A DNA stretch of 64,000 nucleotides, taken from the IMG/VR virus record IMGVR_UViG_3300034104_003795, positions 124,001 to 188,000 of that record; one strand, 5' to 3'. Within the stretch, counting starts at the first letter, position 1. The number at the start of each line of letters is the position of its first letter. A model generated the notes under the pieces. It was not told the origin of the DNA. It did no database searches and saw only the letters and a list, made by a program, of their open reading frames with translations. The position numbers and the translations under genes are program-made. Positions 560 through 17,746 of the stretch are shown piece after piece.

Positions 560-1936
560 TTATTTATTGTAATTTTCTAGGTAATATTTTAAATCTTCAG
601 GTGTACCTAATCCCCACATTTTTTCAATATTGAATGTTTTTATTTTTTTACCATCACCAATTGCTTCATTGAAAACAGGACAAACATAGAATTCATTATT
701 TACTCTTATATTTTTATTAATCATTTGTTCTGCATACTTTACATAATCAGAACCTTTAGCCCAATAGTAAACACCAACAGTTGCTATATCTGAAATTGGA
801 TTCTTCTCTTGTACTTCGGTTACATAACCATACTCATCCACTTTAGCAAATGACCATTTAGGATGAGTTGAATGAAATGAAAGGATACCACCATCAACTT
901 TTTGTTCAATCATCTTATACATAAACTCATTTGAATCCCACTCTATAAATTGGTCAGAGTTTGCCATCAATAAAGGTGCATCGGAATCAATCAATTCTTT
1001 TGCCAATAGAGTAGTACATGCTGCACCTTCTGTCAATCCATCAACTTCCACAATCTTACAATTAGGCGTAATTAAGTTTAAAAGGGTATCCAAGTTATAC
1101 TTCTCTCTATGTGATTTCTGAACTACATAGATAAATGTAGCATCTATGTTTAGGTTATCAACTACAACCTGAATCATTGGTTTACCTTCCACATCAATTA
1201 GTGGTTTAGGGAACGTATATCCGGCTTGTTGAAATCTAGTTCCTGCACCTGCCATTGGGATAAGTACGTTCATCTTACCACCTTGCCATTTTGGTTTACT
1301 CATAACTTTCTTTTCGTTTAATTTGTTTACTATTTTTTCTAATGTCAAATCATGTGGATTATCTACTCTCAAAACATTTGCTCTACTTCTACTCGCAGCT
1401 AACAAACCGGGTGGTGAATCTTCTACAATTAACGTTTCTTCTGGTAATACACCCATCATACTCATAGCCTTCCAATACATTTCAGGATGTGGTTTAGAGT
1501 TCTTTACATCCTCATTAGAAAGGATTAAATCCATATACTCAATAAGTCCTATCTTTGATAACATAACCAATACAGACCTTCTAATTGAATTTGAAGCACA
1601 TGCTAATTGATAACCTCTATCTCTCAACTCTTTGAATACCGAAACCAATACATGATTAGTTTGTAATTGGGATATTGCCTCAATAGTTAAGTGTTGTTTT
1701 CTATACCAAATTTCATCATAGAAATCGGTATGTAACCCTTTATTTTTAGTAAGCATTTCAAGCTTTTGAGTTGTCTTTAATCCATCGTATATTGATAGAT
1801 GTTCAGCTTCGGTAATTACATAAGAATTACCAGTTAGAATTTCGATTTCTCTCAATGCCTGGTTTAATGTATTGTAGTGTATTTCTTTTGCTTCAACTAG
1901 TACACCATCTAAGTCAAAGATAATTAATTTTGTCAT
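560..1936 (-). CDS. HAD-family phosphatase fused to BcbE-like sugar-phosphate nucleotidyltransferase
   Basis: N-half has FDLDGVL, KPHPEMY and VEDS HAD motifs. C-half has IPMAGAGTRF..GYTFPKPLI, ANSDQ and GLGTPEDL. Start trimmed to MTKLIIFD (ATG 1936). Confidence 0.85.
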   Translation of the reverse strand: MTKLIIFDLDGVLVEAKEIHYNTLNQALREIEILTGNSYVITEAEHLSIYDGLKTTQKLEMLTKNKGLHTDFYDEIWYRKQHLTIEAISQLQTNHVLVSVFKELRDRGYQLACASNSIRRSVLVMLSKIGLIEYMDLILSNEDVKNSKPHPEMYWKAMSMMGVLPEETLIVEDSPPGLLAASRSRANVLRVDNPHDLTLEKIVNKLNEKKVMSKPKWQGGKMNVLIPMAGAGTRFQQAGYTFPKPLIDVEGKPMIQVVVDNLNIDATFIYVVQKSHREKYNLDTLLNLITPNCKIVEVDGLTEGAACTTLLAKELIDSDAPLLMANSDQFIEWDSNEFMYKMIEQKVDGGILSFHSTHPKWSFAKVDEYGYVTEVQEKNPISDIATVGVYYWAKGSDYVKYAEQMINKNIRVNNEFYVCPVFNEAIGDGKKIKTFNIEKMWGLGTPEDLKYYLENYNK

Positions 1937-1937
1937 A

Positions 1938-2633
1938 TTACCAAATTCCTCTATCAAACGGGTTTATATTATATTCTTCAAAAATAGGATTTAATTCGGT
2001 TTGATATTCTGTTAAATTCCATTTACCTTTATTAATCGCAGTTGCTATGTATGGAAATACAAAACTATCATAATGGAATATTCCTCTTTTTTTCTCAATA
2101 CCATTCGTTGCTGAAAAATCTTTTTCATTCAACTTTATAGAATCTTCAAATTCATAAATTGTTAATTCTAAATGATTTTCTATTAACTCCTTAAATGTTT
2201 TAGTTTTAATAATAGTTGGTTGTATTGAAAATTTAGATAAATCATTTTGAACCAAAGTATCTTCAAATTCCGATTTTGTTCCACCCGAACCAGCATATAA
2301 TAATTTTATACTATTAGCTTTATCGGTTAAAATATATTCATAATATTTTTCTAAATATACGTGAAGTGGATTGGAATATAAAATCATATCTTCGTGAAAA
2401 AATAATATCACATCTTCATTTATTTTATCCAAACATTCTAAAATACGATTTGTATATTTTTTAGAATCATCATATGTGATTTGTAAGCAATTTTCTGGAA
2501 GTGCCTTATCAATTTCATTAACACATACATAGAGTTTATAATCAGGCATAAATTTATTTAATTGCCCAAAAAAAGATGGCCATACATCTTTCATATCCGT
2601 ATGCGTGTATATTACTAACGGTAGTTTATTCAT
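1938..2633 (-). CDS. Putative GT-A-fold glycosyltransferase / glycan-related hypothetical
   Basis: Likely start MNKLPLVIYTHTD at 2633. It has a FFHEDMIL DxD-like motif and sits in the glycan cluster. Confidence 0.5.
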   Translation of the reverse strand: MNKLPLVIYTHTDMKDVWPSFFGQLNKFMPDYKLYVCVNEIDKALPENCLQITYDDSKKYTNRILECLDKINEDVILFFHEDMILYSNPLHVYLEKYYEYILTDKANSIKLLYAGSGGTKSEFEDTLVQNDLSKFSIQPTIIKTKTFKELIENHLELTIYEFEDSIKLNEKDFSATNGIEKKRGIFHYDSFVFPYIATAINKGKWNLTEYQTELNPIFEEYNINPFDRGIW

Positions 2634-3348
2634 AAAAATAAGATATTTCTTTTGAGTATTGAGAATATGGGTCCATGTAAGGTCTTGTTTTTCTACCATG
2701 TGTAAATTCATCAATAGAAGAACCAACATCTACATATTGGTTATTTGGATTAGCCCTATACATTTCATCTATTAGTATTTCAGAAACAGGACCCGCAGAT
2801 ACAAAAAATGTTTGATTCTCTAATTGGGATACATATTCAATTAGTTGTGTAATATAGTCCTCACCATAATCTAACCAATATCTTATACAATCATCTGGAA
2901 ATGGAAATATTTCATTTACTTTAAATGGAAAATTTTCTTTCCTAGCTCTATGATTACATATAACATATACACTCTTATCTAATGTTTTATAAAACTCATA
3001 CATCTTTTGATAATTTGAATTTATCCAAAGATTTGCAAAAGTTTTATTTGAGTTTTGAATTCTATCTGATAAGAAAGTATAATCATCAATACTATCCGAA
3101 TGAGCTGATATTGCATAATGGTAATTGGTTTCGGTATGTTCCAATGATTTTAATAAACCTTCACCAACTTTATTTAATCCAATTGGAGTAGTCCATCTAT
3201 CAACTGCAAATGCTTGTGAATTAGTACCAATTGCATTACCTTTCATCAAACCAACTTCACCGTCAGCATATCTTGCATAAGCAAAATTTGTATCCGATTT
3301 TATAAGATTGGTGTAGTATTCAAAATCTGTTTGAAATTTATTCTGCAT
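2626..3348 (-). CDS. GT-D-fold (DUF1792-like) glycosyltransferase-like protein
   Basis: AYARYADGE resembles the GT-D RxGDGE motif; C-terminal VSAGP...YVDVGS. Confidence 0.55.
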   Translation of the reverse strand: MQNKFQTDFEYYTNLIKSDTNFAYARYADGEVGLMKGNAIGTNSQAFAVDRWTTPIGLNKVGEGLLKSLEHTETNYHYAISAHSDSIDDYTFLSDRIQNSNKTFANLWINSNYQKMYEFYKTLDKSVYVICNHRARKENFPFKVNEIFPFPDDCIRYWLDYGEDYITQLIEYVSQLENQTFFVSAGPVSEILIDEMYRANPNNQYVDVGSSIDEFTHGRKTRPYMDPYSQYSKEISYFYE

Positions 3349-4342
3349 CTAATATCTTTTTAATTTTTTCCGCTGCTCTACCGTCTCCATATGGACAAGG
3401 TTTACAAATATACGAATTCTTTTCCAACTCACCAAATAATTCTTTAAGTTTAGTTGGTTCTTCGCACATATAAAGATGACCGGTTTTTATACCTTCAGGT
3501 CTTTCGGTTGTTTTTCTACACACAATTATTTTCTTATTAAAGAAAGAACCTTCTTCTTGCAATCCACCACTATCGGTAACTACCAACTTACAATCTTTAA
3601 GAATATTAATCGTTTCATTGTGCGTTAAAGGTTCTACGATATTAATATTTGTTAGTAAATTCTTATGCTTTTGTACGTTTGGATTTGGATGAATCGGTAA
3701 TACAAATTTGTATTGTGGATAATCAATTGCTAACTGATTAATTACATTAAACCATTCATCTAACCAATGATGATTTTCTCTACGATGCATTGTTACTAGA
3801 ATAGTATCACCATAACTACCTTTATCATACTTCATAAGATTATCCAATACAGTATTCCCAACTATATGGATATCTCCTTTTACTCTTTCCGCATCTAAAT
3901 TTTCAGCAGAAAGCTGTGTTGGTGCAAAATTAATATCTGCTAAACGAGCTATCATCTGTCTATATCCTTCTTCAGGATATGGGTTTTCTAAATCGTAACT
4001 CCTTAACCCAGCTTCCATATAATATATCTTAATACCTCTATGATAAGCTGCTAATGCACATGCAAAAGCGGAAGCCGTATCGCCTTGCACCAACACACCT
4101 CTAAATTTGTAATTTGGAAAATATTCCATACAACTAATCATAATAGAATCTAATCTAGTATAACGAAAGGATTCTTTTATATTAACTCTAAAATCAACTT
4201 TTACATCCGAAAGTAAATCTTCATGTTGACCTGTGAATAAAAGTTTATATTCTTTCTTATCCATAATATCAATCAATGGTTTTACTTTCAACCATTCTGG
4301 TCTAGTACCAAAACATATTAATATTGGGTCTTTCTTATTCAT
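3338..4342 (-). CDS. wecB: UDP-N-acetylglucosamine 2-epimerase (non-hydrolysing)
   Basis: FGTRPE, FTGQH, VQGDT, EAGLRS, PEEGYRQ, HRREN and TDSGGLQEE motifs. Confidence 0.95.
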   Translation of the reverse strand: MNKKDPILICFGTRPEWLKVKPLIDIMDKKEYKLLFTGQHEDLLSDVKVDFRVNIKESFRYTRLDSIMISCMEYFPNYKFRGVLVQGDTASAFACALAAYHRGIKIYYMEAGLRSYDLENPYPEEGYRQMIARLADINFAPTQLSAENLDAERVKGDIHIVGNTVLDNLMKYDKGSYGDTILVTMHRRENHHWLDEWFNVINQLAIDYPQYKFVLPIHPNPNVQKHKNLLTNINIVEPLTHNETINILKDCKLVVTDSGGLQEEGSFFNKKIIVCRKTTERPEGIKTGHLYMCEEPTKLKELFGELEKNSYICKPCPYGDGRAAEKIKKILDAE

Positions 4343-5525
4343 TTTTATTTACTCCCCATTTTTGAATTGCTTTATTGTATTCTCTACCATATTCTTTATC
4401 TATACTCTGCCTCATAGCTTTTGCACCAGCCAAAGTACCATCAGGATGCCCATGAAGTGCACCACCAACATTTGCCATATAATCAATACCAACTTTATCA
4501 GTTACCCATTGAGTAAGACCAGGATGGAAACCACAGCTTAATGCCGGCATTACACCATATTGGTGCAATACTTTCATTGAATCAATTACCTCATCTTCAG
4601 GCCATTTGTAATATCCACCAATCATTCCGGCGTGAATAAAATCAACACCCATCATACCTGCTAACTTACAAATTACCGTCCAATCAATATAATAAGCGTG
4701 ATTTCTATTGGTTAGAATTTTATCACCACTTTTTTGAAAATGTACAAATATTGGTAAGTCTAATTCTCTTACAGCCTTATAAACCCCCATACCACACCAA
4801 AAATTAATATGAACACCATTACCACCCAACTCATATACTCTCTTTACTCTATCTAAAATATGTGGATAATCTGAATGAATAGATACACAATAAACTACAT
4901 TTTTATCTTTTAAATATTCTGCAATCAATGGTACTCTTTCTTCAATTGTACAAAAAGCGGGATTACTCATAATCTCATCTTCTTTAATGAAATTAACGCC
5001 ACCTTCTACTAATTCTTTAACCATCTCTAATAATGTCTGCGGAGTGATACCAATTTTAGGTTTCACAATTGCACCAAACAACGGTTTATCAAATGTTTTA
5101 GTGTATTCTCTAATACCTTTAATACCAAATTTAGGTCCTAAAAATAAATCTTCAATATGTTGTGGAAACCAGATATCTTTAACAGCACATTTTGTAATAT
5201 TATCAATATCCATCTGCCCACCCATAATATTTACCAACAAATGTGCAATCCCATCCGTTTTAAAATCAATGTTTATAACAGGAAACGCTACCTTAACTAA
5301 TCCATTATTAATAGATTTAAGCTCATCTTCATCTCCCAATACTAAACAACTATTTCTCTCAAATAGCTCATCAGTTTCCCATTGATTTCTTACATTTGGA
5401 TTACCTACACTTTGGCCTATTGCCAAATTCCAAGCGGCATCTCTTAAATTAGTTTCAGATGCCAAATCATAAGTAACAATAAAGTACTTTTCTATATCTA
5501 CTTCTTTTCTAAAAATATTTACCAT
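4335..5525 (-). CDS. RuBisCO-like protein (form IV RLP)
   Basis: GPKFGIKGIRE, GAIVKPKIG (K175/K177), GGVNFIKEDE (K201/D203/E204), DFIHAG (H327), PALSCG and VGGALHGHPDG. E60, N123, H294 and K334 equivalents appear substituted. Confidence 0.92.
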   Translation of the reverse strand: MVNIFRKEVDIEKYFIVTYDLASETNLRDAAWNLAIGQSVGNPNVRNQWETDELFERNSCLVLGDEDELKSINNGLVKVAFPVINIDFKTDGIAHLLVNIMGGQMDIDNITKCAVKDIWFPQHIEDLFLGPKFGIKGIREYTKTFDKPLFGAIVKPKIGITPQTLLEMVKELVEGGVNFIKEDEIMSNPAFCTIEERVPLIAEYLKDKNVVYCVSIHSDYPHILDRVKRVYELGGNGVHINFWCGMGVYKAVRELDLPIFVHFQKSGDKILTNRNHAYYIDWTVICKLAGMMGVDFIHAGMIGGYYKWPEDEVIDSMKVLHQYGVMPALSCGFHPGLTQWVTDKVGIDYMANVGGALHGHPDGTLAGAKAMRQSIDKEYGREYNKAIQKWGVNKNE

Positions 5526-5526
5526 A

Positions 5527-5847
5527 TTATATAACGTATTTATCGCCAGGTATTGACGGAGTTTTTATAATTAAGACTGTACAATCTTCTAAAAAGATTG
5601 GGTCAGCAATTTCGTATGGGTTTAAAATAAAGATATCACCTTCATTTAATTCTTTGTCTTGTATGGTCATTTTTCCACTAACCAAATAATTTATTTCAGT
5701 ACCAGCTTTGTGATAATGAGTATCCCATTTTTCACCTTTAGTGTGGTGTTTATAACAAACCTCAAACTGGTCTGTTTTAAAAGCAGTTGGTTCAAAGTTA
5801 CCAATAAACCATCCACCTTTCATGTCTTTCATTTTAAGAATGTCCAT
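5527..5847 (-). CDS. Small cupin-domain protein (possible sugar epimerase/isomerase)
   Basis: HYHK..TEINYLVSG metal-binding cupin motif 1 and GDIFILNP motif 2. Confidence 0.8.
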   Translation of the reverse strand: MDILKMKDMKGGWFIGNFEPTAFKTDQFEVCYKHHTKGEKWDTHYHKAGTEINYLVSGKMTIQDKELNEGDIFILNPYEIADPIFLEDCTVLIIKTPSIPGDKYVI

Positions 5848-6562
5848 ATAATTGTTTGTATTTATTTAAATCCTCTGGTACACCAATTGGCCAATGTAAG
5901 TTATAAAAGAATGGTAATATTTTTTTCCCATCTTTAATAAGATAATTGTATGATGGTGCTATATAAAATTCGTTATTATACCTTTCACCAGATTCTATCA
6001 TTTCTTTTGCCGAAGATACGAAATCTTTTCCATGTTTCCAAAAATGTAATCCATTAGTTGCAGTATTACTGATTACAATCTTTTCTTTAACTTCAGTAAC
6101 CTCACCTTGTGGGTCTAATTTCATATATGAATTTTTCTTTGATGATGATATAAATGCACCTAATATACCATCTGCTTCATTTTTGTCACAAAACTCTAAA
6201 AGTTTATTAACATCAAAATCATGTATCATTTGGTCACAATTAACAATAATCAATGGAGTATCTTCATCTATATAATCACTAGCTAACAATGCGGTACATG
6301 CTGGTCCTTCTGTTAATTCATCTATTTCAATTACAACCGAATCGGGTTTTAGTGATTTTAAAAAGGTTTGTAAACTATTTCCTACTGAATGCTTTTTTTG
6401 AATTATAAAAATATGTTTCCCATCTATATTTAGATTTTCAACAACTGATTGTACCATTGGTTTTTTGTTTACCGGAATAAATGGTTTTGGTATCGTATAT
6501 CCTACATCGGAAAATCGTTTACCTTCGCCGGCCATCGGTATTATTACATTAACTTTTCTCAT
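5834..6562 (-). CDS. BcbE-like sugar-phosphate nucleotidyltransferase
   Basis: IPMAGEGKRF..GYTIPKPFI, VNCDQ, NEFYIAP and IGVPEDL; paralog of the C-half of 560..1936. Confidence 0.85.
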   Translation of the reverse strand: MRKVNVIIPMAGEGKRFSDVGYTIPKPFIPVNKKPMVQSVVENLNIDGKHIFIIQKKHSVGNSLQTFLKSLKPDSVVIEIDELTEGPACTALLASDYIDEDTPLIIVNCDQMIHDFDVNKLLEFCDKNEADGILGAFISSSKKNSYMKLDPQGEVTEVKEKIVISNTATNGLHFWKHGKDFVSSAKEMIESGERYNNEFYIAPSYNYLIKDGKKILPFFYNLHWPIGVPEDLNKYKQLYGHS

Positions 6563-6565
6563 TTG

Positions 6566-7162
6566 TTACGTTTTAAATGCTTCTATGTTTTTATAATGAC
6601 TCAAATAATTGTTATATTTTTGCCAATAAATGTCAACTCTATCTTTTTCTAGATTTTTGAGAATGAAATTGATTTTTTTATCAAATCCAAGCTCAAACAA
6701 TCTATTTGTAAATGCAACTTCTGCGTGTGGTACATTAAAATCTGAAAATGTAAATAATTGAATCATATCATCAACATTTCCTTCCGATAAATAATCTACC
6801 AAATATCCGGCATTATGTTGGTGATATGCTAGAAAATTTAAACAATCACTTTTAAACGATTTAAATATTTCTTCACAATTGATTGGGAACAAATCATATC
6901 TCCACTTTACAACTCTATCGTATCCCAGTTCTTTTGCCTTTATAAATCCATTTAAAGACGATACTCTTTGTAAATTTAAATTACCAACTCCAACTATTTC
7001 TGGTCTAGGGCTATATACAACCACATCGTTTTTATCCGGATAACAATAGGTTGGCTCCCCTTCCCATGTTGAAAAAATAATAGGAAATGGTTTCCAATCA
7101 TTTTTCAATTTTTCTATATTATCACAAATAGTGCTACCTTGTATAACAATTGCCGTTTTCAT
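6566..7162 (-). CDS. WavE-like glycan biosynthesis protein
   Basis: AIVIQG, IIFSTW, NLNLQRVSSLNG and VVKWRYD follow the WavE family pattern. Confidence 0.55.
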   Translation of the reverse strand: MKTAIVIQGSTICDNIEKLKNDWKPFPIIFSTWEGEPTYCYPDKNDVVVYSPRPEIVGVGNLNLQRVSSLNGFIKAKELGYDRVVKWRYDLFPINCEEIFKSFKSDCLNFLAYHQHNAGYLVDYLSEGNVDDMIQLFTFSDFNVPHAEVAFTNRLFELGFDKKINFILKNLEKDRVDIYWQKYNNYLSHYKNIEAFKT

Positions 7163-7164
7163 GT

Positions 7165-7935
7165 TTATTTTTCATATACAAGTTTCCAACCTTTCATTCT
7201 TTGGTTATGAAAATATTCATTCATCAATGCTCTAAATGGTACACCTTCCACACTTCTCTGATTTGATTCCCATAGTGAGTTAGCATCGCCACCATATTGT
7301 GCTCCTTTTATACTTCCCCACATTTGTTTATCATTCTTTGGATGTGGTGGTACAAATGTTTTAATTCCCGCATACTTCTGCAACATATATGAGAAGTGCA
7401 TATCTTCACCACAGGTATTATATTTAGATTCAGGTTGTTCTCTCCACATATGAGATAACCATTCCTTTTTAAAGAACCAACTATGCCCAACCAAATCAAC
7501 TTCTAATGTATGTTCATTATTTCCACCTTCAGGCCAACCAACTCTAGCATATGGTTCGTAGTATGATGATTGTTCCGGTGGAAGTGGTTGTGGATAAATT
7601 AATCCAACCGTACCCAATAGTCCTTCATTCGTTTTCATTGTATTCATGCAATTCTCTAACCATTTTGAACCAGGTATAGTATCATCATCAAAAATACAAA
7701 CATATGGATTTTTAGCCATAAATGCAAAAGCAAATCGTGCCCATACACCGAAGTTGTAATTACAATAAGCACCCGCTATTTCAGTACCAATATCATAATT
7801 AATCAGGTCATTATCACCAGGATTATTATACCAAAAAAGTATTTCATCCGGCTGAACCGTTTGGTTTCTTAATGCCTCTAATTGTTCATTAAGATTTTCC
7901 GCTCTTTTGTAACCATTTAATATAACTGTTATCAT
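7165..7935 (-). CDS. Glycosyltransferase, GT2-like
   Basis: MITVILNGYKR start, IFDDDTIPG DxD motif and GEDMHFSY. Confidence 0.75.
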   Translation of the reverse strand: MITVILNGYKRAENLNEQLEALRNQTVQPDEILFWYNNPGDNDLINYDIGTEIAGAYCNYNFGVWARFAFAFMAKNPYVCIFDDDTIPGSKWLENCMNTMKTNEGLLGTVGLIYPQPLPPEQSSYYEPYARVGWPEGGNNEHTLEVDLVGHSWFFKKEWLSHMWREQPESKYNTCGEDMHFSYMLQKYAGIKTFVPPHPKNDKQMWGSIKGAQYGGDANSLWESNQRSVEGVPFRALMNEYFHNQRMKGWKLVYEK

Positions 7936-8933
7936 AATTCTGTCATTATTCTTTTTAACCAAAGTTCTTTTGAAAAACAAGCTTCATAATTAGCCTTTGC
8001 CATTTCTGAACATTCATTGTAAAATTGTTTGTCATCTCTCAATCTTATTGCCAATTCTCTTGCACTTTCTAAATCATTTACAGCTACCGATAAGGATGGG
8101 TGACAAAGTAATTGTGTATCTACATCTTGATTTCCAATACAAGGGATACCAAAGTATGCACAATTTAGGGCAAACGTACCAGCTGCTACCGTTGGCATCA
8201 TATGAACTGCGTATTTGAATGTTGATAATACGGTCATCCATTCACTCCACATTAATCTTGGTAAGTGAGTTAAGTTATCAATTACATTTTCATTCTCTCT
8301 CATAGCATGAGATGTTTGTGCCCAAATAGGAACATCAAAGTTACCAGCTATCATATAACTTTCAAACCCACCATACCATCTTGCGAAGTTACCACCTATA
8401 ATTGCCTTATCTTCTTTTGTTGGTACTATGTCTTTGATTAGAGTATCAATCATCAATGTACCGATAGGTCTTACTTTTTTATTAGGAAACAATCCCTTAT
8501 AATAATATATATCTGAATCATTGTGCGTAAAGATTGAATCACATGATTGTAAGAAATTAAAGAAATAGATTTGGTCTGATATAGTATAATCATTATACCA
8601 CCAATGCGGTCCTTCTTGAATATAATGGACTTTCTTATTACCTCTTTCCTTCAATTTACCAACTATATCTTGTTGTAATAATTCTGAAAATGGATTAATA
8701 CCATCTATAATTTTACTTCCCTCTGCACTTAAAAATACTTTGCCTTTTGGAAATATAATAAACACATGGTCATAATTAATCAAATGTTTATCCGCACCAA
8801 ATAGATGAATATTATAATGGTCTGCGTCTAAAGCGTGCATCCAAGCAAATTCGGTTCTCATATTTGGATGATGTGCCGGTATTTTACCAATAAACCCCAT
8901 TTCAGTAAGGAAGGCTATTTTAGATTGTATCAT
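7932..8933 (-). CDS. Putative GT-B-fold glycosyltransferase
   Basis: C-terminal AGTFALNCAYFGIPCIG resembles the GT-B donor-binding region; cluster context. Start trimmed to MIQSKIAF. Confidence 0.55.
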   Translation of the reverse strand: MIQSKIAFLTEMGFIGKIPAHHPNMRTEFAWMHALDADHYNIHLFGADKHLINYDHVFIIFPKGKVFLSAEGSKIIDGINPFSELLQQDIVGKLKERGNKKVHYIQEGPHWWYNDYTISDQIYFFNFLQSCDSIFTHNDSDIYYYKGLFPNKKVRPIGTLMIDTLIKDIVPTKEDKAIIGGNFARWYGGFESYMIAGNFDVPIWAQTSHAMRENENVIDNLTHLPRLMWSEWMTVLSTFKYAVHMMPTVAAGTFALNCAYFGIPCIGNQDVDTQLLCHPSLSVAVNDLESARELAIRLRDDKQFYNECSEMAKANYEACFSKELWLKRIMTEL

Positions 8934-9549
8934 ATAAAGCGTTTTGTTTTTCTTGTCTTTCAATTTGCTTATGATGATACAAACAATAAATTTCTTCCTG
9001 AGGTAATATTGATAATGTATTATATCCCGCTATCCTTTCATGTACCTTACCACTCCATTCTATTTCAGAAGTTCTTCTATAAATACGAGTTTGATAGTCA
9101 GGAAAATTTACCCAACCGTTTTCATTAACTTTCCATCCCCATTTCTTAATATGTTCGGCAGTTAAACCATTCACCGTATTAATTCTAGGTACGAAGAAAA
9201 GGTCTACATCTTTATTATAATCTAAAAAGTTGTGAATATTTTCAACCAAATATTCGGATGGCATTTCATCTGCATCAATTTGAAAAATAAAAATACCGTT
9301 TGCATTATTTTTTAAATTATTCTTAAATGATGCAAAATCTTTATTAAGAGGAAATGAAATTACTCTTATATTCTTATGTATTTGTGAGATTATATTTAAA
9401 TAATCTTTTATCTGCGATGTTGCAGAATCGGAATCATACTGAACCAGTATTTCATCTTCGGATTTTATCCTAGGTTGTAGGAAATCAACTAAAGTTGTGA
9501 TTTCATTTATTTCATTACAAACTGTAATGGCGTATGTAACATTTATCAT
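8920..9549 (-). CDS. GT2-family glycosyltransferase
   Basis: YAITVCNE, FQIDADE, PDYQTRIY and VHERI motifs. Confidence 0.85.
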   Translation of the reverse strand: MINVTYAITVCNEINEITTLVDFLQPRIKSEDEILVQYDSDSATSQIKDYLNIISQIHKNIRVISFPLNKDFASFKNNLKNNANGIFIFQIDADEMPSEYLVENIHNFLDYNKDVDLFFVPRINTVNGLTAEHIKKWGWKVNENGWVNFPDYQTRIYRRTSEIEWSGKVHERIAGYNTLSILPQEEIYCLYHHKQIERQEKQNALYDTI

Positions 9550-11218: not shown

Positions 11219-14200
11219 TTAATGCAATTGTACCCAAGCCCCATTCGCGTATCCCATAAATTTATGAGTAGTTGAATTGTATATCATATCTCCATTCGCA
11301 GGAGTTAAACTTCCAGTTTGTACATCAGTAAATGTTGCCATTCTCATTGGTGATTGCGTTACAATTACCGCAGTACCAGCTGTTAAGTTTAAGTTAGTTG
11401 CCGATGTTATTTCAGGTGTACCGGTTGCATATATGTTAAATCCAGATGCACTTATCGCACCACTAACAAACATAGAACCTGTTAGTTTCATTTCTGCTCC
11501 ATCGAATGTGAGAGTATTACTTACAAATAATCTTTCAGGTGAATTTTCGTATCTAACTAACCCATTATTTACACTTCCAGTTACAGCTAATAGGGATGCA
11601 ACTCCAGAAGTTCCAGATGTACCATTCGTACCAGATGTGCCATCAACACCACTTGTACCAGTCACACCAGATGTACCAGATGAACCAAATGCAGTACCGT
11701 CTAAACCATTTTTACCAGATGAACCAGACGTACCATCAGAACCATTTGCTCCAGGTGCACCATTTGTTCCAGATGTACCACCACTACCAGCAGTTGCTCC
11801 TGCTGCGGTTAAACCACTTGTACCAGAAGTTCCAGAGCTACCACTAGTACCCATAGTACCGTTTTCTCCATTTAATCCCGATGAACCAGATGAACCAATA
11901 AATGTTCCATCTTTACCAGATGTACCAGATGACCCAAAAAATCCAGATATACCAGATGTACCGGAAGTACCATCTGAACCATTTACACCAGATGTTCCAT
12001 CTTTACCAAATCCAGATGAACCAGATGTACCAGATGAACCAACAAATGTTCCATCTTTACCGGAAGTACCGGATGTACCATCTTTACCAGATGAACCTGC
12101 ACTACCCGCACCACCACCGGTTCCTGCGGTGATTGTTATATGTCCACTACCAGGTGTATTAGTTACAACCGCCCCACCGGTAAATGTTATTTGATTTACA
12201 CCACTAATAGATGTAGGTCCAACATCATCATTTATTGTTAATGCAATAGATGTACCAGAACTACCACTTGAACCGGATGTACCGGCTGTTCCACCTATAC
12301 CAGTTATTCCAGATGAGCCAGATGTACCATCGGTACCAGGTGCCCCAATACCATTAAGTCCAGATGTTCCAGATGAGCCATCTTTACCAGATGTACCAGA
12401 TGTACCGCCACTTCCACTTACTCCTGCGGTTCCAGATGAACCAGAAGTTCCACCACCACCATCTTTACCAGATGTACCAGAAGTACCATTTGAACCCCCA
12501 CCGCCTACACCACCGGCTACAGTAAGTGCAACGGTACCGCCACCACTATTCGTAGCACGAATTGTATTATCCAATGTTAATGTGGTTGTTGCAGCTGCGG
12601 AGAATGAACCACTATTAATTGTAAGTCCACCACCACCACCACCGGTTGTTATAGTTACTTGTCCGCCACCATCATCTGCAACAACGGCTCCATTGAATCG
12701 TATTGTACGAACTGAACCAAAAGAACTACCACCTTGTTGAGATACTGTTATCGCTCCAAATGAAGATGTAGCTATTATTCTAGATATATCATTAACTCCA
12801 CCAACCCAAGCATATCCTTGTGGAAGTGAAGCAGATAAAGGTCCACTTACTTGTAGAGAACCTGTAATTTGTATATTATTTGTTGTTGCGAATACCGAAC
12901 CGGTTGCCGCAAATATTCCAGTACCACTACCAGCACTACCAAATGAAGATGTTGCTACTAAAATTGTTCTATTATTAGGACCACCTACCCAAGCATATCC
13001 TTCTCTTAAAGATGAAGTAATTGAACCACTAATATTCAAATTTTTACCAAATGTAACATCAGCATCGTCAAATGCAACTGCTTCAAAGGTTCTAAAATGT
13101 AGTTCATGATAGAGATTACCAGCTTTTGTATAAAGTTCTCCTTTGGCATTAGTACTTTTATCAGTCCACAATATTGAAGAATTTTCTTCCTGTGCTCCTC
13201 TAGAATCAGAACCTAAATCTAAAATTTGAACGGTAGGACCATACAACATACCACCATATTGTGTTTTACCAATTCGTATAGAACCGGTAATATGCAGAGA
13301 ACCACTAATATGTGCAGAACCAGTATAAGGGAATACAGTTGTTGTTAAACCAGATGTTCCCGCAGTTCCACTTATTCCAGATGAACCAGATGAGCCAGAA
13401 GTTCCAGATGAACCAGAGCTTCCAGAAGTTCCTGATGAACCACTTGTACCATCTAAACCGGTTGTACCATCTTTACCGGATGTACCAGAAGACCCACTTG
13501 AACCAGATGTTCCAGAACTACCACTACTTCCAGATGTACCAGATGAACCAGAAGTTCCAGATGAACCAGAGCTTCCAGAAGTTCCAGATGAACCACTTTG
13601 ACCAGGTGCACCTGCCGTATTTATATACCATGAAGTTATACCAGTACCACTACCTGATGTAGTTGTTATATTAACCACTAAATCACCTGTACCGCTGTTA
13701 TAAGATGTTACAGTTCCTTCTAATACATTTGATGCATTTTCAGAAATAATAATAGCCTGTCCAGGAGTCCATTGTAATCCAGTTCCTATTGTGAAATTTT
13801 TAGAACCAGTGCTTATATTGTTTGAAGTACTCGATGTTGATGAGAATCTATCACCATTTTGTCCAGAAGTTCCAGATGAACCCGATGAACCAGATGTACC
13901 ATCTTTACCAGATGTACCAGATGAACCGCTACTACCAGATGTTCCAGATGAACCGGAAGTACCACTCTCTCCAGAAGTTCCAGATGAACCTGAACTTCCA
14001 GAAGTTCCAGAACTACCACTACTTCCTGATGTGCCATCTTTACCAGATGTACCAGAAGAACCGGATGTACCTGAACTTCCTGATGTGCCATCTTTACCGG
14101 AAGTACCAGAAGAACCACCACTACCAGCAGTACCAGCAGGTCCACTAGCTATTGAAGTTGTTTTTCCTATTGTTTTTGTAGAACTATTGTAAACTAATAC

Positions 14201-14534: not shown

Positions 14535-15053
14535 TTAAGGATTTTCCGGTTTAGGGGGAGATTGCTTTGGTTTTGGTATCTTAAGAAACTTTAAAAAGTC
14601 ATCAGTAATAAACTTAACTTCCTTTATGGATTTCACATTATTAAGTAAATAGGTTCTATATGTACCAGGCTGATGTTCATATATTCCATGTCTTTTTAAT
14701 TCTTGAAATGTTTTTGAACCAATCTTATTATCGGGTGACAACAACTCATCTAAAGTATTTTTTTCTGCAATTTCTTTAATTTCATCGTATTTCAATCCCC
14801 TTTTTAAATTCAACTTTAGCCAATGAAAGAATTTTTCAGGTCGCGCTTCACTTATCTTTATACAATGTAGTACTTTATCAGGTGTAATACTAATTAAAAA
14901 AATAATAGCACTTTGAGGCCCATTAAACGAAGTAAGTTTTCCACCAACATACTCATACGAAACTATTTTATAAATTCGTCTTGGAGTTAGTTTTGTTTTA
15001 GGAACTATGGATTCTCTTTGTATCAGCCTATTATATAAGTTTCCGTATGGCAT
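14535..15053 (-). CDS. Hypothetical protein
   Basis: 172 aa ORF abutting the upstream GT4 gene; no recognised motif. Confidence 0.65.
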   Translation of the reverse strand: MPYGNLYNRLIQRESIVPKTKLTPRRIYKIVSYEYVGGKLTSFNGPQSAIIFLISITPDKVLHCIKISEARPEKFFHWLKLNLKRGLKYDEIKEIAEKNTLDELLSPDNKIGSKTFQELKRHGIYEHQPGTYRTYLLNNVKSIKEVKFITDDFLKFLKIPKPKQSPPKPENP

Positions 15054-16357
15054 TAACCTATTTTATTAAGTTTTGGTAATTGAATTTTTTGACTATTTAC
15101 TGTAGGTGCGTTAAATGGAACTACTTGAGGTGCTCTTTTTACATAAGTATTAAGTATTTCTTCAAATCTTTCCGTCATTTTTTCTAAAGTAAAACTTTTA
15201 AGAGTATTTTCTCTTAATCTAACGGATTGTGACTTATATGTGTTATAGTTCTTATATACATCATATAATTTATTTGCCGCATTTGAATAGTGTACCGTAA
15301 ACCATTGTGCTTCTTTCATACAAAACTGGTCTGCTGCTGAATCGTGTACATTTGTCAACGAACCCTCTAATAAAACCGCATGTTCTTTTGGTAAGAAATC
15401 GGTATGTCCACTCCAACCACTAGCTATAATTGGTTTACCCGTCAAACTAAATTCAGCCATAGGTCTACCATACCCTTCACCCTTCGCAAATGATACCATT
15501 GCTTTAACCTTCGGATGATGGTATAGATTACTCATATCGCTTTCTTCCATATCACCATGAAGTAAATAAATAGGTGGACACTTATCACCAAAACTCTTTA
15601 TAACTTCTTCAATTTTCTTTCTAGTAGCTTCTCTATCCATTACACTAAATCCGGCATGCGATGTCTTTATGATAAGAGCTGGTTTGTTTTCTTTGGTATA
15701 TTGGAATACGGTTGCAAATGTTTTAATTGCCATACCAATATCTTTTCTATCTTGTCCCAAGTCTCCTTTCAACCAATGTCCAACAACTAAAAAACAAAAA
15801 TCTTCTTTTATATTTTCTAAAATATCAGTATTTGTTTTAGATGGTACGGATGATTCAAATATATCGGTATCAACTCCTTCAAAAAGCACTTCAATTGGCT
15901 TTACAACTCTAATTTCACCAACTATTTCATCAGTTTGTTGATTTTTTTGTTGATAAACAGTTCCACCTAAATTTTGTCTTGTGAAATGAGATGGTACTAA
16001 TATCAAATCCATTTTGTTAGAACCATCAATGAAATCTTTTGGAGCGATTGTAGTTTCAACACCGGCAGTTATACCAATATTATAGTGCCCTTTTGGTTCA
16101 AATTCATTTGCTACCGAAACTTGCATAAACACATCCGGCTTTTGTTCTACTACTCCTACAACTCTTTCAAGCATCCATCTACCAAATTCATCTTGGTCAG
16201 TTACTTGATTTTGTGGAGTGTTACCCCAACGAAGTGGGATAATCTTAATATCATATTTATCCATTTTGCGTAGTGATTTCATCAAATCTCTACAATGGTC
16301 CCCATATCCACTTCTCGTAAAAATAGGTCCCTGAAATACTAATGTTGGTTTACTCAT
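15053..16357 (-). CDS. GT4-family glycosyltransferase
   Basis: SGYGDH, DRKDIG and KGEGYGRPMAE..GKPIIASGWSGHTDF (EGxGxPxxE motif). Confidence 0.85.
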   Translation of the reverse strand: MSKPTLVFQGPIFTRSGYGDHCRDLMKSLRKMDKYDIKIIPLRWGNTPQNQVTDQDEFGRWMLERVVGVVEQKPDVFMQVSVANEFEPKGHYNIGITAGVETTIAPKDFIDGSNKMDLILVPSHFTRQNLGGTVYQQKNQQTDEIVGEIRVVKPIEVLFEGVDTDIFESSVPSKTNTDILENIKEDFCFLVVGHWLKGDLGQDRKDIGMAIKTFATVFQYTKENKPALIIKTSHAGFSVMDREATRKKIEEVIKSFGDKCPPIYLLHGDMEESDMSNLYHHPKVKAMVSFAKGEGYGRPMAEFSLTGKPIIASGWSGHTDFLPKEHAVLLEGSLTNVHDSAADQFCMKEAQWFTVHYSNAANKLYDVYKNYNTYKSQSVRLRENTLKSFTLEKMTERFEEILNTYVKRAPQVVPFNAPTVNSQKIQLPKLNKIG

Positions 16358-16360
16358 AAC

Positions 16361-17746
16361 TTATTTAATTTTGAACACTTCAAATCTTTTTCTTGGTTTC
16401 CAATTCTCAAACACATCTTCAATCCCATCTATTAATTGTTGGGCCATATTGATATGTGTTAATCCCGCTTCATTGATAAAAAACTCTCTACCAATTAATG
16501 CGTTTGCTTTTCTTTCTTCTTTTGGTGTATTGTATGATTTAGCAATTGCTTGTGCAACATCTTCTATATCAACTCTATCATCCCAAATATACGGTGTTGG
16601 TACTGAACCTGCTAATGCTTGTGCTCTACTCCATACCGGATACGCCCAAGGACCAGGTTCTGCTTTACCTTCCCATTTTCTCCATTCATGTAAAGAACCA
16701 ATCTTAATATAATCATCTGCAACCAATACATTACCTTCAACTTTAAATCCACATTGGTCTTGCAATCCACCGGTTACGTTTACAATGATTGGAGTTCCAG
16801 CCATTATCGATTCTGCGGTTGCTAATCCAAATCCTTCGTTGTTAGCAATATTGATTGTTACATCTGCTATATTATAGTTCCAATTCAATTCTTGTTGAAC
16901 TCTTCTTTTTTCAGAAAAACGGATATTAATACCAGGTGTAAGTTCTTCAATTACAGCATACAAGTCAGTTCCATTTTCATCAACAGGCTGTGTATGCATT
17001 AATAAAAGACATTTATCCGCTTTATCTTTACCAATAATCTCACAAAATCTTTTATATGCCATTATTACATCGGCCGGTTGTTTTCTGCGAATATTTCTAT
17101 TACTCCAATACAATACAAAATCATATTCTTTACCACCTAAAATTTCATTACGATATTCCGCAGGTACTTCGGTTGGTTTGTAGATATCAGTATTAATACC
17201 GTGTGGTACATACTTTACTTGCCAATCTTTTAGAGGTCTCCATGTTACTTTATCGGTTCTAGAAGTAATTCTTTTTATAATACCATATGTTTGTCTTGAT
17301 ATACATCCAATCCAATCACAACTTTCATAATAATCTCTATTATACATTGGGTCTGGTAAATCATCCCAAATTGCGTAGAAAAGAATTGGAATATTTTGTC
17401 TGATTTCGTGTTCGATATCATACAACCATGTCCAATAACGAGGGTCAGTAAAGTGTAAGATTGCATCTGGGTTTTCTGAATTAATAATCTGCCTTAACAA
17501 ATCAGCATTTCCATACCCATTCCAAGGAAGTATTTTTAAACTAGCATCTGCTACTCCATAATTTTTTTGTATATCTTCGCTAACATCCAAAACCTTACCT
17601 TGTTCAGGATGGTTAATTGCCGCTCCAACTTGATACCAATCGTATTTGTGTATCGTACCCAATACGAATTCTTTTGACATTGTGGCTATACCACTTGCCA
17701 TTCTTAAATCATCCGAAAGTAATAGGATTTTTTTCTTTTTTGCCAT
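16361..17746 (-). CDS. GT4-family glycosyltransferase
   Basis: NRNIRRK and NEGFGLATAESIMAGTPII..TGGLQDQ. Confidence 0.87.
   Translation of the reverse strand: MAKKKKILLLSDDLRMASGIATMSKEFVLGTIHKYDWYQVGAAINHPEQGKVLDVSEDIQKNYGVADASLKILPWNGYGNADLLRQIINSENPDAILHFTDPRYWTWLYDIEHEIRQNIPILFYAIWDDLPDPMYNRDYYESCDWIGCISRQTYGIIKRITSRTDKVTWRPLKDWQVKYVPHGINTDIYKPTEVPAEYRNEILGGKEYDFVLYWSNRNIRRKQPADVIMAYKRFCEIIGKDKADKCLLLMHTQPVDENGTDLYAVIEELTPGINIRFSEKRRVQQELNWNYNIADVTINIANNEGFGLATAESIMAGTPIIVNVTGGLQDQCGFKVEGNVLVADDYIKIGSLHEWRKWEGKAEPGPWAYPVWSRAQALAGSVPTPYIWDDRVDIEDVAQAIAKSYNTPKEERKANALIGREFFINEAGLTHINMAQQLIDGIEDVFENWKPRKRFEVFKIK

What the first reader, a model, noticed from the sequence alone, without database searches (positions are those of the whole stretch)
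560..6562. Phage-encoded RuBisCO-like protein embedded in a nucleotide-sugar pathway (RLP + cupin + two BcbE-like nucleotidyltransferases + HAD + WecB)
Seen: a 396 aa form IV RLP is tightly packed between a cupin and WecB (2-nt gap and 8-nt overlap), inside a single-promoter glycan cluster. It keeps K175/K177, K201-x-D203-E204, H327, S379 and the GG phosphate loop. It lacks E60, N123, H294 and K334 equivalents and has K at R295. Established: characterised RLPs act on phosphorylated keto-sugars or keto-acids (methionine-salvage enolases/isomerases, apiose-catabolism transcarboxylase). BcbE-type nucleotidyltransferase-like and HAD genes occur in bacterial capsule loci. Inference: RLP, cupin, NTP-transferases and HAD form a biosynthetic route to an unusual activated sugar (ketose or branched), which the neighbouring GTs then use. 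That would be a RuBisCO fold repurposed for viral glycan synthesis. It is not a CO2-fixation gene.
Basis: partly seen in the sequence, partly recalled or inferred. Interest (0 to 1): 0.88.

Follow-up and report, generated by a model that had tools for sequence, protein, structure and literature searches.

The report
Phage RuBisCO-like enzyme in sugar-activation module
A large phage carries a non-carbon-fixing relative of RuBisCO locked into a conserved gene module with a sugar-activating enzyme and a small cupin. In sister phages a ribose-5-phosphate isomerase sits in its place, so it most likely reshapes a pentose phosphate into an unusual activated sugar for the phage's glycan genes.

Summary
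Window 4335-5525 (-) encodes a 396-aa RuBisCO-like protein (RLP) between a 106-aa cupin and WecB, in a myovirus-like phage.

The RLP keeps the Mg/enolisation core: K175, K177, K201, D203, E204, S379, G381 and GG403/404. It has lost the carboxylase residues: E60G, N123G, H294Q, K334Y.

It belongs to the phage "IV-like" RLP clade reported in 2019 with unknown function, so a phage RLP is not new.

The following appears undescribed:
- In 79 of 80 IMG/VR loci the RLP lies beside, almost always abutting, a 4EVW-type nucleotidyltransferase (NTase), usually with the cupin between them.
- NTase-cupin, RLP-NTase and mini-GDPD-RLP fusions exist.
- In cyanophage relatives the same module (NTase, cupin, mini-GDPD) carries RpiB fused to the NTase where the RLP sits here. 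Another relative fuses the NTase to RibB.

The common denominator is ribulose-5-phosphate.

WecB and the HAD-NTase fusion are separate, non-core passengers of the glycan island.

Best reading: the RLP is an enolising isomerase or epimerase that feeds a nucleotide-activated pentose-derived sugar. The product is unknown.

The parts
5834..6562 (-). Nucleotidyltransferase (242 aa), the first gene of the core module. It is of the sugar-phosphate nucleotidylyltransferase (4EVW/'BcbE'-like) type.
   Evidence: PF00483 52.7 bits, cutoff 21.2. Best PDB match is 4EVW, 7e-10. Adjacent to the RLP in 79/80 viral loci. phrog_3980, 'unknown function'.
5527..5847 (-). Small metal-binding cupin (106 aa), the second gene of the core module. 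Probably a sugar-phosphate isomerase or epimerase.
   Evidence: The HxH...E motif (H44, H46, E51) and the C-terminal KTPSxPGDK motif are conserved in 34 homologues. AF2 pLDDT 95. Best Foldseek hits are the Thermococcus mini phosphomannose isomerases 7ZVM/7ZVY (E 2e-6, TM 0.65). Fused to the NTase in about 10 loci. 45% identical to the cupin of cyanophage Bellamy gp207.
4335..5525 (-). RuBisCO-like protein (396 aa) of the phage 'IV-like' clade. It keeps the enolisation/Mg core and lacks the carboxylase residues.
   Evidence: PF00016 6e-33. Below every NCBIfam equivalog cutoff. Clade support SH-aLRT 99. K175, K177, K201, D203, E204, Q294, Y334, S379, G381 and G403 are invariant in 87 family members.
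3338..4342 (-). Non-hydrolysing UDP-GlcNAc 2-epimerase (WecB). An island passenger, not part of the core module.
   Evidence: TIGR00236 229 bits, cutoff 210. Near the RLP in only about 7/80 loci.
2626..3348 (-). ORF of 240 aa, function unknown.
   Evidence: No Pfam, NCBIfam or PHROG hit. Homologues in 4 of 68 loci.
1938..2729 (-). ORF of 263 aa, function unknown.
   Evidence: No Pfam, NCBIfam or PHROG hit.
560..1957 (-). HAD (beta-phosphoglucomutase-like, class IA) fused to a second nucleotidyltransferase paralogue. A separate module shared with cultured cyanophages. The likely true start is the Met at residue 8 (about position 1936).
   Evidence: PF13419 1e-29 and PF00483 1e-10. 59% identical over the full length to Synechococcus phage S-CAM9 gp067. 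The bPGM equivalog cutoffs are not met.
6566..9549 (-). Upstream island genes, tightly packed with the module: a 198-aa unknown, a GT2 (7165-7980), a 343-aa unknown, and a GT2 (8920-9549).
   Evidence: PF00535 hits. Gene packing.
15053..17746 (-). Two further glycosyltransferases, beyond a collagen-like tail-fibre gene (11219-14470).
   Evidence: phrog_2170 glycosyltransferase. PF00534/GT4. Tail-fibre PHROGs for 11219-14470.

Best explanation
The RLP is the sugar-phosphate-rearranging enzyme of a conserved, horizontally mobile module: nucleotidyltransferase, cupin, RLP and, in most other phages, a mini GDPD-like protein. The module turns a pentose-phosphate-pathway ketose phosphate, most likely ribulose-5-phosphate or a close relative, into a nucleotide-activated sugar or keto-sugar unit. 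The glycosyltransferases and methyltransferases of the phage's glycan island then use it.

Proposed mechanism:
1. The RLP binds the phosphate at the retained P1 site (G381, G403, G404).
2. It uses the carbamylated-Lys/Mg2+ centre (K201, D203, E204) with K175 and K177 to enolise the ketose.
3. It reprotonates the enediolate to give an epimer or a positional keto-isomer. There is no carboxylation, because K334, H294, N123 and E60 are replaced.
4. The cupin performs a further metal-dependent isomerisation.
5. The NTase adds NMP from an NTP.

Shown: gene content, residue pattern, clade, module conservation, fusions, and the RpiB/RibB alternatives.

Inferred: the substrate, the order of steps, the product and the acceptor.
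For: - NTase, then usually the cupin, then the RLP: same strand and close together in 79/80 IMG/VR loci.
- The same trio occurs in bacterial MAG chromosomes or contigs with a different gene order: L087 and L088.
- It also occurs in deep branches of the family: P0134 and P0136 with the small cupin-sized ORF, P0128 with the NTase only.
- Rosetta-stone fusions:
  - NTase-cupin (343-371 aa) in about 10 loci.
  - RLP-NTase in P0122.
  - Mini-GDPD-RLP in P0150.
- In 30 viral loci and cultured cyanophage Bellamy, the homologous NTase is fused to RpiB (PDB 1o1x, 5e-25).
  - In nearly all of them the same cupin and the mini-GDPD follow.
  - RpiB therefore occupies the RLP's slot.
- No RLP locus has RpiB within 10 kb.
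- In S-SKS1 and 10 viral loci the NTase is fused to RibB (PDB 3h07, 1e-47).
- RpiB and RibB both act on ribulose-5-phosphate (established biochemistry).
- The family-wide invariant active-site signature argues for an active enzyme with enolisation chemistry.
- The most basal member, P0135, sits with a cupin-type sugar-phosphate isomerase (PF06560), an FGGY kinase, transketolase and an aldolase.
- The surroundings in many phages are sugar-nucleotide and glycan genes.
Against: - There is no biochemical datum for any member.
- The cupin is missing in about a quarter of the non-redundant loci (17 of 68), some of them cut contigs. The mini-GDPD is missing from this window. The minimal set is therefore only RLP plus NTase.
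- The NTase's substrate class, anomeric 1-phosphate versus terminal phosphate, is unknown.
- If the substrate is an anomeric 1-phosphate, a mutase is needed. A candidate for it, the HAD domain, is found near the RLP in only about 8 of 80 loci.
- The cupin fold match is generic (TM 0.65, about 20% identity).
- RpiB 'replacing' the RLP shows a shared slot, not a shared reaction.
- Two loci (L029, L057) carry both the RLP and RibB.
Confidence: 0.6

Rival explanations
1. The module makes an NDP-pentose that is used to glycosylate the phage's own DNA bases, for example a pentosyl-hydroxymethylcytosine as in RB69 or Thanatos. It would not be used to build a glycan.
For: - Phages do make NDP-pentoses for DNA modification: UDP-arabinose is inferred for RB69.
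- A UDP-xylose pyrophosphorylase has been shown for Thanatos (PMC12838424).
- The RpiB and RibB fusions point to pentose chemistry.
Against: - The island holds many GT2 and GT4 glycosyltransferases, FkbM/TylF-type sugar O-methyltransferases, WecB, GDP-mannose dehydratases and DegT aminotransferases. That is typical of oligo- or polysaccharide assembly, not of one-step base glycosylation.
- tblastn with the NTase found no RB69- or Thanatos-type phages.
- The module also occurs in bacterial chromosomes.
- Genes for hydroxymethyl-pyrimidine synthesis could not be surveyed. Only 64 kb of a 274-kb genome is available.
Confidence: 0.12
2. The RLP is an auxiliary metabolic gene that reroutes host pentose-phosphate or nucleotide-derived carbon. 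This would be catabolic, like the operon around basal member P0135 or the archaeal AMP pathway. It would have no role in glycan synthesis.
For: - P0135 lies in a catabolic operon with an FGGY kinase, transketolase, aldolase and an ABC transporter.
- The best NCBIfam and PDB scores are to form III RuBisCO.
- Cyanophage relatives carry transaldolase nearby.
Against: - All members other than P0135 that were examined pair the RLP with an NTase, not with kinases or transketolase.
- An RLP-NTase fusion exists.
- The carboxylase residues are absent.
- No AMP phosphorylase or R15P isomerase is nearby.
Confidence: 0.1
3. RLP, cupin and HAD form a methionine-salvage-like trio. They would correspond to the MtnW enolase, the MtnD acireductone dioxygenase and the MtnX phosphatase, recycling methylthioadenosine or 5'-deoxyadenosine by-products.
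For: - The same three folds form the Bacillus mtnW-mtnX-mtnB-mtnD cluster.
- MtnW is among the better-scoring relatives (149 bits NCBIfam, 123 bits PDB).
- From memory, not tested: R. rubrum pairs a DeepYkr RLP with a cupin methylsulfurylase.
Against: - The RLP is outside the MtnW clade and far below the MtnW cutoffs (149 vs 409 bits, 125 vs 514 bits).
- The cupin shows no significant similarity to MtnD, and the HAD none to MtnX.
- The HAD is non-core and fused to an NTase.
- No mtnA, mtnB, mtnK or mtnP lies nearby.
- K177 is kept, where the MtnW reference has V.
Confidence: 0.03
4. The module makes or destroys a ribose-derived signalling nucleotide (ADP-ribose-like) as a counter-defence. The NTase would form an NDP-5-pentose and the GDPD-like protein would cut a phosphodiester.
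For: - A TIR-RuBisCO-like fusion exists among distant relatives (P0185).
- The GDPD-like partner retains a full phosphodiesterase motif.
- The pentose-5-phosphate logic fits.
Against: - P0185 is outside the family (31% identity).
- The module sits consistently in glycan-gene neighbourhoods.
- No defence or anti-defence genes were seen adjacent.
- No PADLOC search was run.
Confidence: 0.05

Closest known systems
Phage 'IV-like' RuBisCO-like proteins (Jaffe, Castelle, Dupont & Banfield 2019, Mol Biol Evol; PMC6389311)
   Same: It is the same clade. The proteins are encoded on large myovirus-type phage contigs from many environments. They group with Beckwithbacteria sequences (L084 nests in the clade). 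They branch outside the other RLPs and have diverged key residues.
   Different: That paper left the function 'unclear', and its text mentions no gene context for the phage RLPs. The following are added here: the NTase-cupin-RLP(-mini-GDPD) module, the fusions, the RpiB/RibB alternatives, and the invariant Q294/Y334/C380 signature.
MtnW/YkrW 2,3-diketo-5-methylthiopentyl-1-phosphate enolase (methionine salvage)
   Same: Both have the RuBisCO fold, the carbamyl-Lys/Mg enolisation core, no carboxylation, and a monophosphate keto-substrate logic.
   Different: They are separate clades. The equivalog cutoffs are missed. K177 is kept here and is V in the MtnW reference. There are no mtn neighbours here. 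The cupin and HAD are unrelated to MtnD and MtnX.
Type II phosphomannose isomerase/GDP-mannose pyrophosphorylase (ManC/AlgA-type; from memory), and the Thermococcus mini-cupin PMIs (7ZVM/7ZVY)
   Same: Both have a nucleotidyltransferase domain followed by a cupin isomerase. They occur either as one protein or as adjacent genes, which is the same logic as the NTase-cupin fusions here. The best structural match of the cupin is the mini-PMI.
   Different: There is no detectable orthology at the sequence level. The NTase is of the 4EVW type and is not a guanylyltransferase equivalog. An RLP or RpiB is added as a third enzyme.
CDP-6-D-fructose/CDP-6-D-glucitol pathway of Campylobacter jejuni HS:5 (Ghosh et al. 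2024, PMC10918830), and the CDP-ribitol (TarI/TarJ) logic
   Same: These are precedents for a nucleotidyltransferase that activates a ketose phosphate or alditol phosphate through its terminal, non-anomeric phosphate, for capsule decoration. That is the kind of reaction a ribulose-5-P-derived substrate would need.
   Different: Different enzyme partners are used: a reductase there, and an RLP, cupin and GDPD-like protein here. Orthology of the NTases was not tested.
NTase-RpiB + cupin + mini-GDPD module of cyanophage Bellamy, and the NTase-RibB fusion of S-SKS1
   Same: The NTase (34-38% identity), cupin (42-46%) and mini-GDPD (37-45%) are homologous. They sit in the same kind of glycan island.
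   Different: RpiB or RibB stands where the RLP stands here. These cultured phages have no RLP at all. Their genes are annotated only as 'phosphatase', 'hypothetical protein' or 'DHBP synthase'.

Membership tests
RuBisCO large-subunit superfamily | Significant match to the catalytic TIM-barrel domain (PF00016) and the N-terminal domain (PF02788) | tested here: met
   PF00016 scores 114.8 bits against a cutoff of 30.1. PF02788 scores 19.5 bits, just under its cutoff of 20.7. There are 98 PDB RuBisCO/RLP chains at E<1e-10.
Bona fide RuBisCO (forms I-III) | Complete carboxylase residue set: E60, T65, W66, N123, K175, K177, K201, D203, E204, H294, R295, H298, H327, K334, S379, G381, G403, G404 | tested here: not met
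   E60G, T65N, N123G, H294Q, R295K, H298D and K334Y in the window protein. Q294 and Y334 are invariant in 87 family members. The rubisco_III model scores 179 bits against a cutoff of 497.
Form IV RLP in the broad sense | RuBisCO fold with the Mg-binding K201/D203/E204 kept but carboxylase residues replaced | tested here: met
Phage 'IV-like' RLP clade (Jaffe et al. 2019) | Phage-encoded, forms one clade with Beckwithbacteria sequences, branches outside the characterised RLP clades | tested here: met
   Clade of 50 rows with SH-aLRT 99, containing Beckwithbacteria L084. It is separate from the MtnW, OiaX, form I and form II references.
MtnW/YkrW enolase | NCBIfam equivalog score, clade membership, and mtn gene neighbourhood | tested here: not met
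   149 bits vs cutoff 409, and 125 vs 514. Separate clade. No mtn genes in the neighbourhood. The cupin and HAD are unrelated to MtnD and MtnX.
OiaX / apiose- and tetronate-pathway RLPs | NCBIfam equivalog score, clade membership, and a four-carbon acid-sugar kinase neighbour | tested here: not met
   140 bits vs cutoff 700. Separate clade from the Marivivens OiaX and Sulfitobacter references. No DUF1537-type kinase in the window or the related loci.
DeepYkr RLP (R. rubrum MTRu-1-P isomerase) with cupin methylsulfurylase | Clade membership with the R. rubrum RLP and orthology of the cupin | not tested
   No tool-provided reference sequence was available. The solved cupins found by profile and fold search did not include a methylsulfurylase.
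Sugar-phosphate nucleotidylyltransferase (PF00483) | Pfam gathering score and the N-terminal G-x-G-x-R...PK signature | tested here: met
   52.7 bits (5834-6562) and 41.7 bits (560-1957), cutoff 21.2. The motif is visible in the 4EVW alignment. No specific equivalog (RmlA, GalU, HddC, GlmU, IspD) reaches its cutoff.
Cupin superfamily | Double-stranded beta-helix fold with the metal motif G-x5-HxH-x3,4-E | tested here: met
   Pfam scores are below gathering (20.6 vs 27). H44, H46 and E51 are conserved. The AF2 model has pLDDT 95 with 225 cupin matches at E<=1e-3. The second-motif His is absent.
WecB non-hydrolysing UDP-GlcNAc 2-epimerase | TIGR00236 equivalog cutoff | tested here: met
   229.2 bits vs cutoff 210.15.
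Beta-phosphoglucomutase (HAD-IA) | TIGR01990/TIGR02009 cutoffs | tested here: not met
   87.5 bits vs cutoff 189, and 94 vs 153. Only the general HAD-IA model passes (48.7 vs 29.4). Whether it is a mutase or a phosphatase is undecided.

The most novel reading that the evidence does not exclude
The RuBisCO fold has been recruited for a reaction class not yet known in the superfamily. It would make, from ribulose-5-phosphate or on an NDP-linked pentulose, a rare ketose, epimeric pentose or rearranged keto-sugar. That sugar would be nucleotide-activated and installed on phage or infected-cell glycans. It might be installed as a phosphodiester-linked decoration that the mini-GDPD partner handles. 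RLP, RpiB and RibB would then be interchangeable entry enzymes of one widespread, uncharacterised viral sugar pathway.
Probability: 0.35. Interest if true: 0.9.

Novelty: new variant of a known kind. Interest (0 to 1): 0.75.

Why it matters
RuBisCO-like proteins are a classic test case for how one active site evolves new chemistry. All assigned functions so far are catabolic or salvage reactions.

The phage clade is large: 2,621 proteins at E<1e-10 and 189 IMG/VR loci. It has had no proposed function since 2019.

The module architecture, the three kinds of fusion and the RpiB/RibB alternatives turn that open question into a short list of testable substrates: ribulose-5-P and its relatives, plus NTPs.

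They also point to cultured cyanophages (Bellamy, S-SKS1, S-CAM9, B3) as tractable proxies. These phages carry the sister modules.

The result would also add a new sugar to the poorly known glycobiology of large aquatic phages.

Tried and rejected
- **GenBank phages.** Megablast of 12 kb and tblastn of the RLP gave no hit. No cultured phage carries this RLP, and PHROGs has no family for it.
- **Methionine-salvage reading.** Rejected by the tree, the cutoffs and the MtnD/MtnX comparisons.
- **Promoter/terminator scan.** At chance level, uninformative.
- **Cupin against the cupin-type PGI next to basal member P0135.** No orthology (hhalign probability 1%). Only the pairing is analogous.
- **Correlation of active-site variants (positions 295, 298, 327) with presence of the cupin or mini-GDPD.** No pattern.
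- **Foldseek of the mini-GDPD model.** No hit at E<=1e-3. GDPD 2PZ0 is only among the top weak hits. The GDPD assignment rests on the sequence motif and a profile hit (7E0V, 1.7e-4).
- **Literature searches** for RLP with nucleotidyltransferase/cupin, or with nucleotide sugar/viral terms. Nothing found.
- **Reference clades.** DeepYkr, Photo, AMC, GOS and Aful references could not be placed in the tree, because no tool-provided sequences were available.

Full report
**What is there**

The window is part of a large myovirus-like phage.
- All genes run on the minus strand at about 32% G+C.
- They include a family-B DNA polymerase, UvsX, DnaB, ribonucleotide reductase, a tail sheath and tail fibres.
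- An identical RLP gene lies on IMG/VR contigs of 274 kb and 134 kb.
- There is no nucleotide match to any GenBank phage.

Region 560-6562 holds seven tightly packed ORFs:
- a nucleotidyltransferase, NTase (5834-6562)
- a 106-aa cupin (5527-5847)
- a 396-aa RuBisCO-like protein, RLP (4335-5525)
- WecB (3338-4342), which passes its equivalog cutoff
- two ORFs with no family match (2626-3348, 1938-2729)
- one fusion ORF of a class-IA HAD domain and a second NTase (560-1957)

The cupin/RLP gap is 1 nt.

The island continues on both sides.
- Upstream lie GT2 genes and, beyond a collagen-like tail fibre, two more glycosyltransferases.
- Past the window's left edge lie an FkbM methyltransferase, a GT2, a HAD and an APS-kinase-like gene.

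The 'single promoter' claim cannot be judged, because consensus hits are at chance level.

**The RLP itself**

Two alignments were used: one to T. kodakarensis RuBisCO and a motif-anchored one to a form I reference.
- Kept: K175, K177, K201, D203, E204, H327, S379, G381, G403, G404.
- Changed: E60G, T65N, N123G, H294Q, R295K, H298D, K334Y.

Across 87 family members:
- K175, K177, K201, D203, E204, Q294, Y334, S379, G381 and G403 are invariant.
- C380 is nearly invariant (85/87).

This is the pattern of an active enzyme. It keeps the carbamyl-Lys/Mg enolisation machinery and the P1 phosphate site, and it has a family-specific replacement of the carboxylation residues. Keeping K177 is unusual, because the MtnW, OiaX and tetronate-type references have V, S and N there.

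No NCBIfam equivalog cutoff is approached: form III 179/497, MtnW 149/409, OiaX 140/700.

**Phylogeny**

A search of 1.8 billion representatives shows a discrete family. Scores are at least 220 bits, followed by a gap to about 170 bits.

In an IQ-TREE analysis of 136 sequences:
- The family is one clade with SH-aLRT 99.
- It is separate from annotated MtnW, OiaX, four-carbon-kinase-linked RLP, form I and form II references.
- It is an unresolved sister to the bulk of the other RLPs.
- The nearest outsiders are form-III-like or MtnW-like proteins that also miss their cutoffs.
- MAG sequences labelled Beckwithbacteria, Patescibacteria, Verrucomicrobia, Planctomycetes, Bacteroidota and Balneola nest inside.

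This matches the 'IV-like' phage clade of Jaffe et al. 2019 (PMC6389311). That paper left the function unclear, and its text mentions no gene context for the phage RLPs. The existence of phage RLPs is already published.

**Gene neighbourhood**

tblastn of the window's proteins against 80 IMG/VR loci shows NTase, then cupin, then RLP in 79 of 80. They are on one strand and usually abutting.
- The cupin is detected in about 60 of the 80.
- WecB is near the RLP in only about 7 loci, and a HAD domain in about 8.

The trio also occurs elsewhere:
- In a Verrucomicrobial 2.3-Mb chromosome in a non-phage context, in the order RLP-NTase-cupin.
- In a Sphingobacteriales contig among GT8, GT25, methyltransferase and radical-SAM genes.
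- In deep branches of the family: RLP, a small cupin-sized ORF and NTase for P0134 and P0136, and RLP with NTase only for P0128.

Fusions tie the parts together:
- NTase-cupin proteins of 343-371 aa in about ten loci.
- An RLP-NTase fusion, P0122, 57% identical to the window's RLP.

Clustering of neighbours in 68 non-redundant loci revealed a fourth partner.
- It is a ~145-aa protein present in 53 of 68 loci and fused to the RLP in P0150.
- Its invariant H-R-G, E-N, E-x-D and G-H-D motifs are the catalytic signature of glycerophosphodiester phosphodiesterases. A profile hit to GDPD 7E0V scores 1.7e-4.
- The AF2 model is very confident (pLDDT 96.7) and has no close solved neighbour.
- It is absent from this window.

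Other recurrent neighbours are FkbM-, TylF- and CmcI-type methyltransferases, GDP-mannose 4,6-dehydratase-type enzymes, DegT aminotransferases and WecB. The module sits in glycan islands in many phages.

**The key clue from cultured phages**

No cultured phage has the RLP, but Synechococcus myoviruses have the other parts.
- **Bellamy.** gp206 is the homologous NTase fused to a ribose-5-phosphate isomerase B domain (PDB 1o1x, 5e-25). The cupin follows directly (45% identical).
- **Thirty IMG/VR relatives.** The order is [NTase-RpiB], cupin, mini-GDPD in nearly all of them. RpiB therefore occupies the slot that the RLP occupies here.
- **Mutual exclusion.** None of the 89 RLP loci has RpiB within 10 kb.
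- **S-SKS1 and ten viral contigs.** The NTase is fused to a bona fide RibB domain (PDB 3h07, 1e-47).
- **RLP with RibB.** Two RLP loci, L029 and L057, also carry RibB.
- **S-CAM9.** gp067 is 59% identical over the full length to the window's HAD-NTase fusion.
- **Phage B3.** A mini-GDPD follows such a fusion (hhalign probability 100%).

RpiB and RibB both act on ribulose-5-phosphate, and RuBisCO-family enzymes act on its phosphorylated relative. The most parsimonious common substrate is therefore a pentulose phosphate from the pentose-phosphate pathway.

The most basal family member, P0135, fits this.
- It keeps Q294 and Y334.
- It sits in a bacterial catabolic operon with a cupin-type sugar-phosphate isomerase, an FGGY kinase, transketolase and an aldolase.
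- This fits an ancestral role in ketose-phosphate interconversion.

**Cupin, NTase and HAD**

- **Cupin.** It keeps HxH...E, and its best structural matches are the ~105-aa Thermococcus phosphomannose isomerases. This match is suggestive only. Together with the NTase-cupin fusions it recalls the NTase-plus-cupin logic of bifunctional PMI/GMP enzymes (from memory).
- **NTase.** Its best solved relative is the uncharacterised Vibrio 4EVW protein, and it reaches no equivalog cutoff. Neither the nucleotide nor the phosphate position is known. Activation of a ketose through its terminal phosphate has a precedent in CDP-6-D-fructose (PMC10918830).
- **HAD.** It is beta-phosphoglucomutase-like but below the cutoffs. 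Whether it is a mutase or a phosphatase is open.

**Most likely mechanism**

The RLP enolises a pentulose phosphate, or its NDP-ester, at the Mg/carbamyl-Lys centre. It reprotonates it to an epimer or keto-isomer. The cupin isomerises further, and the NTase makes the NDP-derivative. The island's transferases and methyltransferases use that product.

Only the architecture and residue patterns are shown. The substrate, the order of steps, the product and the acceptor are inferences. I put about 0.6 on the general statement and much less on any particular product.

**Rivals**

| Rival | Confidence | Main point |
|---|---|---|
| DNA base glycosylation with an NDP-pentose | 0.12 | Has precedent, but fits the many GT2/GT4 and sugar-tailoring genes poorly |
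| Purely catabolic or carbon-rerouting role | 0.1 | Contradicted by the NTase linkage and fusion |
| Methionine-salvage-like trio | 0.03 | Rejected by the tree, the cutoffs and the MtnD/MtnX comparisons |
| ADP-ribose-type counter-defence | 0.05 | Suggested only by a distant TIR-RLP fusion |

**Verdict**

- The RLP-cupin-NTase coupling and the activated-sugar idea are well supported and sharpened.
- The inclusion of WecB and the HAD in one five-enzyme route is not supported.
- The phage RLP clade itself was already known.

The conserved module, its fusions and the RpiB/RibB equivalence appear undescribed in the literature I could search. They make the function directly testable.

**Limits**
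- Several classical RLP clade references were unavailable.

Noticed in passing
L003 8377-8811; alignment A2; absent from the window: A ~145-aa 'mini-GDPD' protein accompanies the module in 53 of 68 non-redundant loci. It has an invariant HRG / EN / ExD / GHD phosphodiesterase motif. Its AF2 model is very confident (pLDDT 96.7) and has no close solved structure. It is also present in cultured cyanophage B3 (gp359). PHROGs lists it as unknown function (phrog_34507).
   Followed up: partly
L102 5998-7155 (Bellamy gp206); L103 6001-7428 (S-SKS1 SWZG_00042); L106-L146: The cyanophage genes are annotated 'phosphatase' and 'DHBP synthase'. They are in fact NTase-RpiB and NTase-RibB fusions. These fusions are conserved in 30 and 10 uncultivated viral contigs respectively.
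   Followed up: yes
P0185 (583 aa; from the representative search): A TIR domain is fused to a full RuBisCO-like protein. It lies outside the phage family, at 31% identity. It may be a defence-system context for an RLP.
   Followed up: no
L095 1-13287 (NCBI GCA_023488455.1) and L096: The most basal family member, P0135, lies in a bacterial sugar-catabolic operon. The operon has a GntR regulator, an FGGY kinase, a split transketolase, a cupin-type PGI, the RLP, a glycoside hydrolase, an ABC transporter and a class II aldolase. It is an uncharacterised RLP pathway in its own right.
   Followed up: partly
window 11219-14470: A 1083-aa collagen-like tail-fibre gene (G+C rises to 0.42) sits between two blocks of glycosyltransferase genes. 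It is a candidate acceptor of the glycan. This was not tested.
   Followed up: no
L035 580-1561 (IMGVR_UViG_3300008110_007812): This RLP copy is 94% identical to the window's RLP but lacks residues 71-137 and is split into two overlapping frames. It is either a decayed gene or an assembly error.
   Followed up: no
L029 12610-13188; L057 12568-13164: Two RLP loci also carry a RibB (DHBP synthase) domain about 1.4 kb downstream of the RLP. RLP and RibB are therefore not mutually exclusive, unlike RLP and RpiB.
   Followed up: partly
window 560-1957: The mechanical ORF starts at a TTG and overlaps the upstream ORF by 20 nt. Comparison with S-CAM9 gp067 suggests that the real start is the Met at residue 8 (about position 1936).
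   Followed up: partly
P0157, P0201: These are IF-2B (ribose-1,5-bisphosphate isomerase)-form III RuBisCO fusions. They match the AMP-pathway fusions already described by Jaffe et al. and are unrelated to the finding.
   Followed up: no
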